This document shows positions 7,745 through 63,461 of a stretch of DNA of 64,000 nucleotides, in pieces. The notes beneath the pieces were generated by a model. That model worked only from the letters and a program-made list of their open reading frames with translations. It had not been told where the DNA came from and ran no database searches. The translations under genes and the position numbers were made by a program. Origin of the DNA: Scyliorhinus canicula. Its lineage: Eukaryota. Numbering within the stretch: position 1 is the first letter of the stretch; each line of letters begins with the position of its first letter. The stretch lies in assembly GCF_902713615.1 (NCBI RefSeq), contig NC_052168.1, positions 5,828,001-5,892,000 on the forward strand, in the 5' to 3' direction.

Positions 7745-7879
7745 TGATTGGCTCTGGATAACACTCCCCCACTCCCTCACCTAAATTGGTCTCTTTGCAG
7801 ATTCCTGATTGGCTATCGGGAAATGTCAATCATCATTGGTGATGTCGTTCCCTGTTAGGATGTCCCAGTTGTATAAATA
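7745..7879 (+). promoter_or_regulatory. Ferritin gene 1 promoter
   Basis: Several ATTGG (inverted CCAAT) boxes; TATAAATA 7872-7879. Has a 7-bp deletion (TGAATGC) relative to the other copies. Confidence 0.8.
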
Positions 7880-7933
7880 CAAGAGCTGGTGGTAGGGAGA
7901 GTTAGTCTGAGAACAGTGATAGCAATAGTCAAG

Positions 7934-10193
7934 ATGGCCTCCCAAGTACGTCAGAACTACCACAAGGACTGTGAGGATGCTGTTAACAAGCAGATCAACC
8001 TGGAGCTCTATTCCTCCTATGTTTACCTCTCCATGGTGAGTTTTGAAGGATTGGGTCCTAATTTAAAATTAAGCTTGTCACTTCATTGCATTCTGAGCTG
8101 ATTTCTTCCTGTCAATGAATTGGAATTAGAATGTATATCTGTCACCCTCCCTGGGTTAAATACTGTTGATACAAAATAGGGATAATGCTAATAGTTGTGA
8201 CCTCGTCTGTGGAGTTAGTTGTGAGGATTAATCTTCAAATGTATCAAGCTGGTTTGCTTTTTCAATTGGTTGGCAGCAGTTGAACATAATTGAATGATTA
8301 GTTGGTGAAAATTGACTCTACTGTGGGGCTGGTTTAGCACACTGGGCTAAATTGCTGGCTTTTAAAGCAGACCAAGGCAGGCCAGCAGCACTGTTCAATT
8401 CCCGTACCACGTGCTGGAATGTGGTAACTTGGGGCTTTTCACAGTAACTTAATTGAAGCCTACTTGTGACAATAAGTGATTTTCATCCTAATGTGTAAAT
8501 CTTTACTTGATGCTGGATCCTTGGATGAAGCAGTAATTCTTTCAATGTATTTGCAAGTTATTTGCCCCTCTTCCATCCCCTTTTGGTTAAGGAGGGGGAT
8601 AGGTTCTTAATTCTGTGCTGAAAGAAATTGGGTTTTCTACTGTTGCCACTGAGTGAGGTACAGGGAAGGGCTTTCACGTTCGAGCCAATAATTTAAATCT
8701 CCTTGAAAGCAAGTACATTGAGGTACAGAATGGGTAATTAAAGCTATTTTTGACTTGGCCATGGATGGGATCTGGATCTGAACTGACACACTTTCCATTG
8801 TGTGTCTCTGACAGTCCAGTCAGATGTTGACCGAATCTTTGGGTCACCACTTCAATTTAAACCCTGTCAGTGAGTCCCAGCTCTTCAAAGGGCATTCCAA
8901 GACATCTTGGTTCTAATGCAGATTAAGATATTCTGTTTTTGAGATGTACTTTTGGAAGTTTGTAGCTTGTACATGGGTTAGTAAATGTGGGACTCTGTGT
9001 ACACTATATATTGAAGACTAAGGTACACTCTTGGGAAGTCGGGAAGGTAGTATCACTGGCTGCCTTGTGGAAGGTCCAGTGAAGGTGACTATTGCAGTAT
9101 TCCCGAGATCAGAGTCCCAAAAAAAAAATGATAATACAATTCAACCTTTCTATTGTGTTTCTACCTGCAGTCCTCCTACTTTGACCGAGATGATGTTGCC
9201 CTGTGTCATTTTGCTGAGTTCTTCAAGGAGCAGTCGCATGAGGAACGGGAACACGCTGAGAAACTGATGGAATTCCAGAATAAACGTGGAGGCCGCATCA
9301 TCCTGGAGGATGTCAAGGTTGGGTTCTGTTGTCTTGATACCACCTTTTATTTTTCTTTTGCTCCACCTAATTGGTTTATTTTGCCACTGTGCCCTTGGTT
9401 CTGGTTAAAACCTGCTTGGTGTTGAATTGAGAATGGGTGGATGAGTTTATGGCTTTTGCTCTTTGAATCACCCTGAGCTAGTGACTAAAGGAAGAATAAA
9501 TGTGGAGGGACAGAAGTAATGGGGTTTGGGCTGTCAACTAGTGGCTTAAATGTTGTGCTGGCTCATGCTGCTGTAGAGAATGTGATTTCCATTGATTAAA
9601 TAACTTTGGGTGGAGGGGAGGGGGGATAGGCTTTGTGACTCTGCAGCATCCCATAGCACTAATGAGGCCTCTTCTTCCTTTTCCAGAAACCAGAGCAGGA
9701 TGAGTGGAGCAATGGTCTGGAGGCAATGCAGAGAGCTCTGCAAATGGAGAAGAATGTGAACCAGAGTCTGCTGGATCTGCACAAACTCTCCTCTGGGAAC
9801 ACCGACCCTCATGTGAGTTGGATGTTGATGTTGGAATCTGTCCTTTACTTTTGTCCATTCTGTAGATCTTGACACTGATCACTAAGCAGTTCCCAGGTAT
9901 TCACTTCCAGTTTAATAGAATTGTGACTTGCCACCTGTGCACATTTAGCCACCATTACCTGCATCATTTTCCATCTCTTCCCCCCCCCCCCCCATTCTCA
10001 CCTGGGGAAAGAACTGTTTAAGCTAATATTCATTTTTCTCCATCAGTTGTGTGACTTCCTGGAGACTCACTACTTGGATGAACAAGTGAAGATGATCAAG
10101 AAGCTCGGAGATCACATCACCAACCTGAAGAGACTGGGAGCCCCTGAGAATGGCACGGGAGAGTACCTGTTTGACAAGCTCACCCTGGACTGA
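7934..10193 (+). CDS. Ferritin gene 1 (M/H-type subunit, 173 aa)
   Basis: Exons 7934-8035, 9171-9317, 9687-9812, 10047-10193; phase-0 GT-AG introns; intact frame; R46C; ends LTLD*; ATTAAA 10263-10268. Confidence 0.96.
8325..8487 (+). mobile_element. Short tRNA-derived SINE
   Basis: GGGGCTGGTTTAGCACACTGGGCTAAA...TACTTGTGACAATAA; related copies near 12362-12520 and 61040-61212. Confidence 0.65.
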
Positions 10194-10774
10194 CGAGGAT
10201 TGCAGAATTAATGAGGAAAAGCTGGATCCAATTTTGTGCTCTATCTTTATTGCTGTATTTGTATTAAAAAAATATAGAGCTGAACTTGTTTTTTCCTTTG
10301 TGTAAATCAGTAACTGATTTCATGGTGTTTTTTTTTTTTTTGCTAAATCTTCAACACGCTCTTTGAATTTCCAGTCCAGCTTCCTGAACTTGTTGCTGCC
10401 CAGGATAATGACAATTGTACTTCAGAAACATGTCGGACTTAAATGCAAATGTGGTTTCCTTGTGCTATTGTGGGAACACATTAATAAATGTCTTACTTGA
10501 CCCTTTAATTCAGTGTGGTGAATCTCTGATTCTGGGGGGGAAGACCTCCTGGTATTCACAAATCATGTACTAGACTGTCTCACACACCACTTGGTTTTTT
10601 TTTATAAGTGAGGATTGTCACATGCATCTAAAAGGATTAATCCAGCAGGTTTATTACCCCTCAAGACTCTTTGGGTAAGTAAACACTGTTTGAATCAGCT
10701 AAACCATTCTATATTCCAAGGTGTAATCTTTCTTCACTATCCAAGCTGATGGGGATTAAACACTTCCTGCCACT

Positions 10775-11680
10775 CCACCTAACCTGTTCATCTTTGGACT
10801 CTGGGAGGAAACCAGAGCACTCTGATGGAAAACCCACACAGACACGGAGAATGTGCAAACTCCTTACAGCCACCTGAGCTTGGAATTAGACATGGGTCCC
10901 TGGCAATGTCAGGCAGCAGTGCTAACCACTATGCTATCTGATTCCTTTACTGACTAAAAATCTATCTCAGCCTTGAACATAATGACCCAGTTTTACAACT
11001 CTGTTGCAAAGAATTCTACAGATTCACTAATTCTCCAAGAAGAAATTCCTCCTTGTCTCAATCTGAAATGGGTGACTCCTACCTGAGATTATGCCCTCTG
11101 ATCCTGGAGTCTTCCCACAAGTGAAAGACAATCTCTCCGCCTCTATCTTCTCCAGCCCTCTGAGAATCTTCTGCTTCAGCAAGGTCACCTCTCATTCTTC
11201 GCTCAAATGAGTACCGGTCCAACCTGTGTAACCTTTCATAAGAAAATCCCTCCATACCCAGGATCATCCTTGTGAACCTTATCTGGGCTGCCTCCAATGC
11301 CTGTATATGTTTCCTTGGTTAAGGAGACTGAACTGTTCACCGTTTTCCCGGTTATCCCAAGTGTGGTCTAACTAATGCCTTGCAAGACTTTCCTATTTTT
11401 GTACTCCATTCCCTTTGAAATAAAGACCAACGTTCCATTACCTTCCCAATTACCTGCTGAGCTTGCATGTTGGGTTTTGTGATTGATGCACGAGCACCCC
11501 CCCCCCCTCATTCCCAGATCCCTCTGTGATGCAGCTTTCTGCAGTCTTTCCCCATTTAAATAATATTCAGCTTCTTTATTCTTCCTACCAAAGTGGAAAA
11601 CTTCACATTCTGCTACATTATGTCCCAACATGATGTCCCATCAGCCACGTTTCTGCCCAATCATTTAACCTGTCTCAGTC
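10775..11680 (-). mobile_element. SINE (~10775-10935) plus degenerate CR1 LINE 3' part (~10935-11680)
   Basis: Minus-strand CEVFHFGRKNKEAEYYLNGERL and AQIRFTRMILGMEGFSYERL are CR1 ORF2 motifs. Confidence 0.75.
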
Positions 11681-62958: not shown

Positions 62959-63144
62959 GTAACATTTCAAAACCGATGTTGTTAAATTTTGTTATGTAAG
63001 GGGATGTAGGTAACTGGGACCGAGGCGAGTGTACAGAGTTAAAAGTCAATCTAGTCAAAATATAATTGAATAGTAGAAAATGTTTGAAGGGTTGAATGAA
63101 CCAATCACGAGTAGCCATCCTTATTTTTCCTGTATTCCACAGAC

Positions 63145-63297
63145 CTGATTTGCTCTGGGTGTCACACCCAACCCCCTCTCATTGATTAATTGGTGCCTGG
63201 ATTCATGGCAGATTCCTGATTGGCTATCAGGGATTGTCAATCATCATTGGTGATGTCATTCCCTGTTTGGATGTAGGATGTCCCAGTTGTATAAATA
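63145..63297 (+). promoter_or_regulatory. Ferritin gene 10 promoter
   Basis: Conserved core; TATAAATA 63290-63297. Confidence 0.82.
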
Positions 63298-63359
63298 CAA
63301 GAGCTTGTGAGGACAGAGGTCATGTTGTTGCTGTTTGCATTGGGCCATTAACCAGTAAG

Positions 63360-63461
63360 ATGGCTTCCCAGGTGCGTCAGAACTACCACAAGGACTGTGA
63401 GGATGCTGTTAACAAGCAGATCAACCTGGAGCTCTATTCCTCCTATGTTTACCTCTCCATG
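63360..63461 (+). CDS. Ferritin gene 10, exon 1 only (continues beyond the window)
   Basis: [34 protein letters not shown] followed by a GTGAGT donor. Confidence 0.93.

What the first reader, a model, noticed from the sequence alone, without database searches (positions are those of the whole stretch)
7872..63360. All ten visible 5' ends lack the iron-responsive element
Seen: TATA-to-ATG distance is only about 62-75 nt, implying a ~30-45 nt 5' UTR. No C-bulged stem with a CAGUGN loop is present; the CAGTGA hexamers in genes 1, 2, 3, 5 and 6 have non-pairing flanks. Known: vertebrate cytosolic H, L and most M ferritin mRNAs carry a cap-proximal IRE bound by IRP1/2, while mitochondrial ferritin lacks one. 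Inference: the amplified family has escaped IRP translational repression and is controlled transcriptionally, giving an iron-independent high-output ferritin system.
Basis: partly seen in the sequence, partly recalled or inferred. Interest (0 to 1): 0.8.

Follow-up and report, generated by a model that had tools for sequence, protein, structure and literature searches.

The report
Shark ferritin gene array without IRE
Ten tandem copies of an iron-storage (ferritin) gene in a catshark-like genome all lack the RNA switch that normally ties ferritin production to cellular iron, and decayed pieces of that switch in related shark and skate genes show it was lost secondarily; the gene array was already published, the missing switch apparently not.

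Summary
The window holds ten + strand ferritin 5' ends (nine intact four-exon H-type genes plus exon 1 of a tenth). Each has an almost invariant CCAAT/TATA promoter, with TATA 62-75 nt before the ATG. No IRE was found by Rfam (gathering score and E<=10), a SIREs-style scan, or my own IRE model run with filters off (best 11.6 bits, none at a 5' end). Canonical skate and shark ferritin genes scored 42-48 bits with the same tools.

The IRE-less genes form one cartilaginous-fish clade, from chimaera to catshark, and share this promoter. A sevengill shark array gene, a skate paralogue and the E62K sister clade keep decayed IRE fragments just after the predicted cap site. The catshark copies have an alignment gap there. 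So the IRE was lost from an IRE-bearing ancestor.

Escape from IRP control, transcriptional control and high output remain inferences. A Greenland shark genome preprint already reports the ferritin clusters and their ovary-specific expression, but its ferritin passages do not mention the IRE. This scan had already noted the same IRE-less array on adjacent DNA (s1-200264). Verdict: a real feature, a new variant of a known kind, of moderate interest.

The parts
7754..8035 (+). gene 1: CCAAT/TATA promoter (TATA at 7872), predicted 30-nt leader, exon 1 (ATG 7934)
12967..13248 (+). gene 2: promoter (TATA 13079), predicted 36-nt leader, exon 1 (ATG 13147)
21712..21993 (+). gene 3: promoter (TATA 21818), predicted 43-nt leader, exon 1 (ATG 21892)
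27001..27282 (+). gene 4: promoter (TATA 27106), predicted 43-nt leader, exon 1 (ATG 27181)
34479..34760 (+). gene 5: promoter (TATA 34591), predicted 36-nt leader, exon 1 (ATG 34659)
38979..39260 (+). gene 6: promoter (TATA 39091), predicted 36-nt leader, exon 1 (ATG 39159)
43533..43814 (+). gene 7: promoter (TATA 43646), leader, exon 1 (ATG 43713)
49445..49726 (+). gene 8: promoter (TATA 49557), predicted 36-nt leader, exon 1 (ATG 49625)
57054..57335 (+). gene 9: promoter (TATA 57166), predicted 37-nt leader, exon 1 (ATG 57234)
63180..63461 (+). gene 10: promoter (TATA 63290), leader, exon 1 (ATG 63360); the rest of the gene lies beyond the window
7934..10193 (+). gene 1 coding span: four exons 7934-8035, 9171-9317, 9687-9812, 10047-10193; 173 aa; ferroxidase residues intact
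13147..15601 (+). gene 2 coding span, 173 aa, intact
21892..24025 (+). gene 3 coding span, 176 aa, intact
27181..32054 (+). gene 4 coding span, 176 aa, intact (long intron 1)
34659..36439 (+). gene 5 coding span, 174 aa, intact (R63W by human H numbering)
39159..40976 (+). gene 6 coding span, 176 aa, intact (R63W)
43713..45622 (+). gene 7 coding span, 176 aa, intact
49625..52736 (+). gene 8 coding span, 174 aa, intact (R63Q)
57234..60315 (+). gene 9 coding span, 173 aa, intact
97..1661 (+). 3' half (exons 3 and 4) of an upstream array copy whose 5' end lies before the window
4492..4993 (+). truncated ferritin fragment (degenerate part of exon 3 plus exon 4) with no exon 1 or 2 and no promoter copy

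Best explanation
Each of the ten 5' ends is a compact promoter of its own. It has two or three inverted CCAAT boxes (the central one in an invariant CTGATTGG context), an ATF/CRE-like TGATGTCAT (intact in 8 of 10 copies), TATAAATA, and an Inr-like TCAGTTC about 32 nt further on. A short, unstructured leader of 30-43 nt follows, then an ATG in a good Kozak context. The genes encode intact H-type ferritin with the ferroxidase centre in place.

The family descends from an IRE-bearing ferritin H gene. In relatives, decayed IRE pieces still sit right after the predicted cap site. In the catshark copies that stretch is missing.

Without a cap-proximal IRE, IRP1/2 cannot block 43S recruitment on these mRNAs. 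Output should then be set by promoter activity multiplied by gene number. A preprint on another shark reports that the homologous clusters are expressed in the ovary. The most likely role is therefore to load oocytes or follicles with ferritin on a developmental programme, regardless of labile iron.

Shown here: absence of the IRE, promoter conservation, the single clade, the relics, purifying selection. Inferred: the TSS, IRP-blindness, ovary expression in this species, and the provisioning role.
For: - No IRE by four methods, each with positive controls.
- Ten near-invariant promoter copies.
- A conservation island: 78% mean identity from CCAAT to TATA, 57% in the leader and 98% in exon 1, against 29-44% further upstream and in intron 1.
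- The same promoter layout roughly 60-100 nt before the ATG in whale shark, sevengill shark, sawfish and chimaera orthologues, none of which has an Rfam IRE.
- All IRE-less loci tested fall in one clade with 96/89 support, and the IRE-bearing canonical genes fall outside it.
- IRE relics between TATA and ATG: sevengill array gene 17/19 identical (0 of 2000 shuffles); sevengill E62K clade 26/30 plus a 3-nt insert (0 of 2000); skate paralogue p about 0.02. The catshark copies have a 12-column gap exactly there.
- Leaders are unstructured.
- Nine intact ORFs carry all seven ferroxidase residues, with dN/dS about 0.17.
- Published report of ovary-specific expression of the shark ferritin clusters (10.1101/2024.09.09.611499).
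Against:
- In the RNA word search, 14 RNA-type contig runs, some from other organisms, hold exactly 10 of 14 sampled words of the gene 1 TSS-to-exon-1 stretch. Only the presumed DNA run holds all 14. The gene-1-specific leader is therefore not seen in RNA assemblies. This fits gene 1 being silent in those tissues. It would also fit a leader that is not collinear with exon 1.
- Ovary expression comes from another species and from a preprint.
- No IRP-binding or iron-response data exist.
- A weak pyrimidine-AG (TTTCTAG) lies in the leader of most copies. It is absent from genes 1, 9 and 10.
Confidence: 0.75

Rival explanations
1. The array mRNAs do carry an IRE, supplied by an upstream non-coding exon or an alternative distal promoter. 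The TATA-proximal start is then not the main one.
For: The gene-1-specific leader words are held by none of the 14 RNA-type contig runs that hold the exon-1 words. A pyrimidine-AG that could act as a splice acceptor lies in the leader of most copies.
Against: - No IRE anywhere in the 64 kb on either strand, even with an unfiltered model. The window includes the complete upstream intergenic DNA of genes 2-10.
- The candidate acceptor is missing in genes 1, 9 and 10 and in one whale shark copy.
- TATA, the CCAAT boxes and the Inr-like motif are conserved from chimaera to catshark, directly before the ATG.
- In relatives the IRE relics lie downstream of this TATA. So this stretch has been the leader historically.
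Confidence: 0.05
2. The IRE is gone but iron control is not. The genes still respond to iron or oxidative stress by another route, for example transcription through the conserved ATF/CRE-like element, or a non-canonical RNA element. 'Iron-independent' would then be wrong.
For: - An ATF/CRE-like TGATGTCAT lies next to a CCAAT box in 8 of the 10 promoters.
- C. elegans ferritin lacks IREs yet is iron-regulated transcriptionally (PMC9128280).
- Exon sequences are unusually conserved even at synonymous sites. That could hide an RNA element.
Against: No known iron-responsive promoter element was identified. The leaders are unstructured. Ovary-restricted expression points to developmental rather than metabolic control.
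Confidence: 0.15
3. Most copies in this window are transcriptionally silent by-products of tandem amplification, so the missing IRE has no regulatory consequence for them.
For: The gene-1-specific leader is not found in RNA assemblies. There is a truncated fragment at 4492-4993. The sawfish array contains broken copies.
Against: - All nine complete genes have intact ORFs, GT-AG introns and all ferroxidase residues.
- dN/dS is about 0.17.
- The promoters are far better conserved than the flanking DNA.
- Expression of the cluster has been reported in ovary.
Confidence: 0.08

Closest known systems
Canonical vertebrate cytosolic ferritin H (FTH1) with a cap-proximal IRE
   Same: Same protein fold and family (PF00210 in the homologues). 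The same four exons with homologous boundaries as the skate FTH gene. All seven ferroxidase-centre residues. 74-76% protein identity to canonical shark and skate FTH.
   Different: Canonical skate and shark genes carry an IRE_I of 42-47 bits about 90-135 nt before the ATG, in a leader of at least 120-200 nt. The array genes have a predicted leader of 30-43 nt, no IRE, and a different CCAAT/TATA promoter.
Shark ferritin gene clusters reported in the Greenland shark genome preprint (10.1101/2024.09.09.611499)
   Same: The preprint reports 179 FTH1 and 155 FTL copies in three clusters syntenic with white shark, mostly full length, with ovary-specific expression of the largest cluster. The window is a catshark stretch of the same kind of array. 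Protein clusters of 69-180 members span all shark orders.
   Different: The preprint's ferritin passages, the only two places in its text that hold the word, do not mention the IRE or the promoter. I found no other paper on this in the searchable library.
Molluscan and schistosome yolk ferritins (IRE-less, reproduction-linked)
   Same: These are ferritin paralogues without an IRE whose expression is tied to egg provisioning rather than to iron (PMC10799875, PMC9128280).
   Different: Snail yolk ferritin has a signal peptide and a 42-aa insertion and is secreted. The shark proteins start [10 protein letters not shown] with no presequence and no insertion. They are also massively amplified.
Mammalian FTMT and FTHL17
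   Same: Both are vertebrate ferritin H paralogues outside the canonical FTH1/FTL pair. FTHL17 is germ-cell expressed and multi-copy in mouse (PMC7760355).
   Different: FTMT is encoded by an intronless gene and is mitochondrial. FTHL17 carries E62K and lacks ferroxidase activity. That both are retrogene-derived and lack an IRE is my background knowledge and was not checked here. The shark genes keep all three introns, a cytosolic-type N-terminus and an intact ferroxidase centre.
C. elegans ftn-1/ftn-2 (IRE-less ferritin under transcriptional iron control)
   Same: Ferritin genes without IREs whose output is set at the level of transcription.
   Different: The nematode genes respond to iron through an iron-dependent enhancer. 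No such element was identified here, and the reported shark expression is tissue-specific.

Membership tests
Ferritin, H-type (ferroxidase-competent) subunit | Ferritin-like four-helix-bundle domain (Pfam PF00210) | tested here: met
   Every one of the 120 listed homologues carries PF00210. The closest are 95-99% identical Scyliorhinus ferritins.
Ferritin, H-type (ferroxidase-competent) subunit | Ferroxidase-centre residues E27, Y34, E61, E62, H65, E107, Q141 (human H numbering) | tested here: met
   All seven are present in all nine complete genes.
Ferritin, H-type (ferroxidase-competent) subunit | Vertebrate four-exon gene structure | tested here: met
   Exons of 102, 147, 126 and about 146 nt with AG/GT boundaries in all nine genes. 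The same four segments are found in the canonical skate FTH locus.
IRE-regulated mRNA (Rfam IRE_I RF00037 / IRE_II) | Hairpin with a CAGUGN (or CAGAGN) apical loop on a 5-bp upper stem | tested here: not met
   The CAGTGA hexamers in genes 1, 2, 3, 5 and 6 have 1-3 of 5 flanking pairs. No covariance-model hit.
IRE-regulated mRNA (Rfam IRE_I RF00037 / IRE_II) | Unpaired C (C8 bulge or UGC/C internal loop) five pairs below the loop, plus a lower stem | tested here: not met
   The pattern scan found no such site in or near any leader. The only in-gene + strand candidate (30130) lies in intron 1 of gene 4.
IRE-regulated mRNA (Rfam IRE_I RF00037 / IRE_II) | IRP1/IRP2 binding and iron-dependent translation | not testable with these tools
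   Needs EMSA, a reporter assay or polysome profiling.
Mitochondrial ferritin (FTMT) | Intronless gene with an N-terminal mitochondrial presequence | tested here: not met
   There are three introns, and the protein starts [10 protein letters not shown], as cytosolic ferritins do.
FTHL17-type ferritin | E62K and loss of ferroxidase activity; intronless gene (my background knowledge) | tested here: not met
   E62 is retained and introns are present. E62K marks the sister clade, not this one.
Secreted yolk ferritin (gastropod type) | Signal peptide and a 42-aa insertion | tested here: not met
   The proteins are 173-176 aa and align with cytosolic ferritin from residue 1. The features themselves are as described in PMC10799875.

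The most novel reading that the evidence does not exclude
Cartilaginous fishes run a dedicated, IRP-blind germline ferritin system. It would consist of two co-amplified gene families, an H-type family with an active ferroxidase centre (this array) and an L-like E62K family. Both share one homologous CCAAT/ATF/TATA promoter, both descend from an IRE-bearing leader, and both have let the IRE decay. Together they would build an oocyte ferritin heteropolymer that provisions large yolky eggs with iron regardless of cellular iron status. That would make it a vertebrate counterpart of invertebrate yolk ferritin, and a second, independent origin of an H/L subunit division of labour.
Probability: 0.3. 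Interest if true: 0.7.

Novelty: new variant of a known kind. Interest (0 to 1): 0.55.

Why it matters
The ferritin IRE is the textbook case of translational control by a metabolite-sensing RNA-protein switch. It is usually described as a hallmark of classic cytosolic ferritin mRNAs.

Here an old, intron-containing, ferroxidase-competent cytosolic ferritin lineage has discarded the IRE. The same kind of array numbers hundreds of copies in sharks. Stages of the decay are still readable: point-mutated relics in the sevengill shark and the skate, and a missing stretch in the catshark.

This gives a natural experiment on what happens when ferritin is uncoupled from IRP. It also gives a concrete hypothesis for why sharks carry hundreds of ferritin genes, namely developmentally programmed iron provisioning of oocytes. 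And it supplies a compact, well-defined promoter that can be tested in reporters.

Tried and rejected
I therefore have no read-level TSS or splice evidence.
- RNA word search on gene 1, TSS to end of exon 1. Fourteen RNA-type contig runs, some from other organisms, hold the same 10 of 14 words, and only the presumed DNA run holds all 14. The conserved coding words cannot tell which copy is expressed, and the gene-1-specific leader is not seen. Inconclusive.
- I did not look up the window's own spliced proteins in transcript assemblies. They have no reference id, and I avoided pasting sequences again. The listed array-type cluster members all come from genome annotations or UniRef, with no transcript contigs.
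- IRE remnant in the window leaders: local alignment to the canonical IRE is at chance level (score 14, p about 0.3). MAFFT can place TCAGTTCTAGAAC opposite the loop and 3' arm, but that is not statistically supportable.
- The relics in relatives do not score as IREs with Rfam or with my own model. They are dead remnants, not weak IREs.
- The + strand IRE-like pattern at 30130 (CAGAGG loop, one mismatch) lies in intron 1 of gene 4. I judged it to be chance.
- 3' UTRs: no IRE, and no cytoplasmic polyadenylation element consensus.
- Literature searches for a prior description of IRE loss in shark ferritins found none.
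Full report
**What is in the window.**
A tblastn search with the spliced gene 1 protein, followed by exon-by-exon blastn, places the genes. All are on the + strand.
- Nine complete four-exon ferritin genes, with ATGs at 7934, 13147, 21892, 27181, 34659, 39159, 43713, 49625 and 57234.
- Exon 1 of a tenth gene (ATG 63360).
- The 3' half of an upstream copy (97-1661).
- A truncated fragment without exons 1-2 (4492-4993).

All nine complete genes have AG/GT intron boundaries and intact ORFs of 173-176 aa. 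All keep the seven ferroxidase-centre residues of H-type ferritin. The closest database proteins are Scyliorhinus torazame and S. canicula ferritins at 95-99% identity, so the window comes from a catshark or a close relative.

**Checking the observation.**
The ten upstream regions align into a sharply conserved block. It holds:
- two or three inverted CCAAT boxes; the central one sits in an invariant CTGATTGG context;
- GTCAATCATCATTGGTGATGTCAT, with small variations between copies;
- TATAAATA.

The 20-mer around the TATA box occurs exactly ten times (0.01 expected). An Inr-like YYANWYY motif lies about 32 nt after TATA in eight copies, which predicts leaders of 30-43 nt. CAGTGA occurs only in genes 1, 2, 3, 5 and 6. 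It has 1-3 of 5 possible flanking pairs and no C at the bulge position.

**Is there really no IRE?**
- Rfam gave no IRE_I or IRE_II hit at gathering score.
- It gave none at E<=10 over the whole window, which by my rough estimate corresponds to about 21 bits.
- It gave none at E<=10 in a 5-kb piece holding two 5' ends.
- A SIREs-style pattern scan (several loop variants, at most one upper-stem mismatch, C bulge, lower stem) found nothing in or near a leader. The only in-gene candidate on the + strand is in intron 1 of gene 4.
- Speed filters might hide weak hits. I therefore built a covariance model from the skate and shark IRE cores and ran it with filters off. The best window hit is 11.6 bits, has no loop, and is not at a 5' end.

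The tools do detect IREs in cartilaginous fishes.
- The canonical skate FTH gene and its assembled transcript score 46.7 bits.
- Canonical shark FTH transcripts score 42-42.6 bits, against a gathering score of 34.
- With my own model they score 47-48 bits.

The predicted leaders plus the first 30 coding bases fold no better than shuffled sequence (z -0.5 to +1.6). The skate IRE region folds into the textbook hairpin with z = -3.1.

**Could an upstream exon supply an IRE?**
The whole intergenic DNA upstream of genes 2-10 lies within the window and is IRE-free on both strands.

The conservation profile argues for a proximal promoter:

| Segment | Mean pairwise identity |
|---|---|
| CCAAT to TATA | 78% |
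| Leader | 57% |
| Exon 1 | 98% |
| Further upstream and intron 1 | 29-44% |

A pyrimidine-AG (TTTCTAG) in the leader of most copies could in principle be a splice acceptor. It is missing in genes 1, 9 and 10.

I could not get direct transcript evidence.
- A word search with the gene 1 TSS-to-exon-1 stretch showed that 14 RNA-type contig runs, some from other organisms, hold the same 10 of 14 sampled words.
- Only the presumed DNA run holds all 14.
- The ten shared words are simply the ultra-conserved coding part.
- The gene-1-specific leader is not seen in RNA assemblies.

This neither confirms nor refutes the predicted start. It remains the main gap in the argument.

**Relatives.**
I fetched orthologous loci from sevengill shark (L004), whale shark (L005), sawfish (L006), chimaera (L007) and a skate 173-aa paralogue (L011). 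None has an Rfam IRE. Apart from the skate locus, they show the same promoter layout: inverted CCAAT boxes and a TATA box roughly 60-100 nt before the ATG. The skate locus has a similar layout, with TATA 57 nt before the ATG.

In a maximum-likelihood tree, all IRE-less genes tested, together with the other array-type proteins, form one clade. It has 17 rows and 96/89 support, and the chimaera gene branches first. The IRE-bearing canonical genes lie outside it.

The next clade out (91/78 support) is a second expanded shark family. It carries E62K, so it is L-like. It has a visibly homologous promoter and no Rfam IRE.

**Relics of the lost IRE.**
- Sevengill E62K-clade gene: the leader aligns to the canonical shark IRE over 33 nt. 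That is 26 of 30 aligned bases identical, a 3-nt insertion at the C-bulge site, and a loop C changed to T. None of 2000 shuffles reaches the score.
- Sevengill H-type array gene: it has TTCTTGCTTCAATAGAGTT, 17 of 19 identical to the canonical IRE (0 of 2000 shuffles). The relic starts 3 nt after the Inr-like TCAGTTTC that follows its TATA box.
- Skate paralogue: it keeps ATTCTTGAGCTTCAAG just before its ATG (p about 0.02).
- Catshark copies: they have a 12-column gap exactly where the sevengill relic core lies. Their leaders have no significant similarity to the IRE.
- None of the relics scores as an IRE.

Three conclusions follow.
- The stretch between this TATA box and the ATG has historically been the 5' UTR.
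- The ancestor carried a cap-proximal IRE there.
- The element has since decayed by point mutation in some lineages and is simply missing in the catshark genes.

The absence of any relic in the chimaera, whale shark and sawfish genes leaves the number of independent losses open.

**How it most likely works.**
With no cap-proximal IRE, IRP1/2 cannot hinder 43S loading. This rule is established for vertebrate ferritin mRNAs and is applied here by inference.

The mRNAs would be compact: a leader of 30-43 nt, a CDS of 522-531 nt, and 63-121 nt to the AATAAA signal, with no CPE and no 3' IRE. The start context is AAGATGG in most copies. Output would then depend on the CCAAT/ATF/TATA promoter and on gene number.

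The Greenland shark genome preprint reports 179 FTH1 and 155 FTL copies in clusters syntenic with white shark, and ovary-specific expression of the largest cluster. Its 'FTL' copies may correspond to the E62K clade; that is my inference. Protein clusters of 69-180 members from all shark orders agree with an expansion of that size.

The most economical reading is a developmentally programmed oocyte or follicle ferritin. This would work like the IRE-less yolk ferritins of snails and schistosomes. The shark proteins, however, have no signal peptide and no insertion. Purifying selection (dN/dS about 0.17) and the promoter conservation argue against the copies being junk.

**Novelty.**
The array and its ovary expression are already published as a preprint. 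In that preprint's ferritin passages, and in the rest of the searchable library, I found no mention of the following:
- the missing IRE;
- the shared promoter;
- the clade-wide distribution back to chimaeras;
- the IRE relics.

IRE-less ferritins as such are known. The papers I read cover the invertebrate yolk ferritins and C. elegans. FTHL17 rests on my own background knowledge. I therefore rate this as a new variant of a known kind. The same scan had already flagged the IRE-less array on adjacent DNA (s1-200264). My results agree with that note and add the phylogenetic depth and the relics.

Noticed in passing
L004:5954-5972 (sevengill shark H-type array gene); L012:5940-5972 (sevengill E62K-clade gene); L011 about 5977-5994 (skate 173-aa paralogue): Decayed fragments of the ferritin IRE lie between the TATA box and the ATG. 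The sevengill array gene is 17/19 identical and the E62K-clade gene is 26/30 identical to the canonical shark IRE. Both have the loop C changed to T and the stems broken, and none scores as an IRE. They document the loss of the element in this family.
   Followed up: yes
L012, L014, L015 (sevengill and zebra shark); same genome about 5.6 Mb beyond the window according to note s1-207375: A second expanded shark ferritin clade carries E62K, so it is L-like. It has a promoter visibly homologous to that of the H-type array (ATTGG boxes, GATGATGTCATTTCCTG, TATA) and also has no functional IRE. Two co-amplified subunit types may share one regulatory design.
   Followed up: partly
L013 (loggerhead turtle, Caretta caretta): At least three tandem ferritin H-like genes with no Rfam IRE in 6 kb of upstream DNA and no TATA box. 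The protein groups weakly (91/78) with the cartilaginous-fish array clade. IRE-less tandem ferritins may not be confined to cartilaginous fishes.
   Followed up: partly
window, all nine genes (exons compared with introns): Exons are 95-99% identical between copies (mean dS 0.076). Introns and intergenic DNA are essentially unalignable (29-44%). dS between shark orders, and between sharks and a sawfish, is only 0.21-0.27. RNA-type runs from several other organisms share exact 31-mers of exon 1. This points to exon-limited gene conversion or strong synonymous constraint. It is unexplained.
   Followed up: partly
window 4492-4993 and 97-1661: A truncated ferritin fragment (degenerate part of exon 3 plus exon 4) with no exons 1-2 and no promoter copy, and the 3' half of an upstream array copy whose 5' end lies before the window.
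   Followed up: partly
window 17515-18588: A minisatellite of about 26 copies of a 41-nt unit, in the long G-rich spacer between genes 2 and 3.
   Followed up: no
window genes 5, 6 (35439-35585, 39928-40074) and 8 (51408-51554); L004 gene b: The residue between E62 and H65 varies. It is R63W (HEEWEH) in genes 5 and 6 and also in a sevengill shark copy, and R63Q in gene 8. This is a recurrent substitution next to the ferroxidase centre.
   Followed up: no
L007:9924-9995: A tRNA gene (50 bits) lies between the two tandem chimaera ferritin genes.
   Followed up: no
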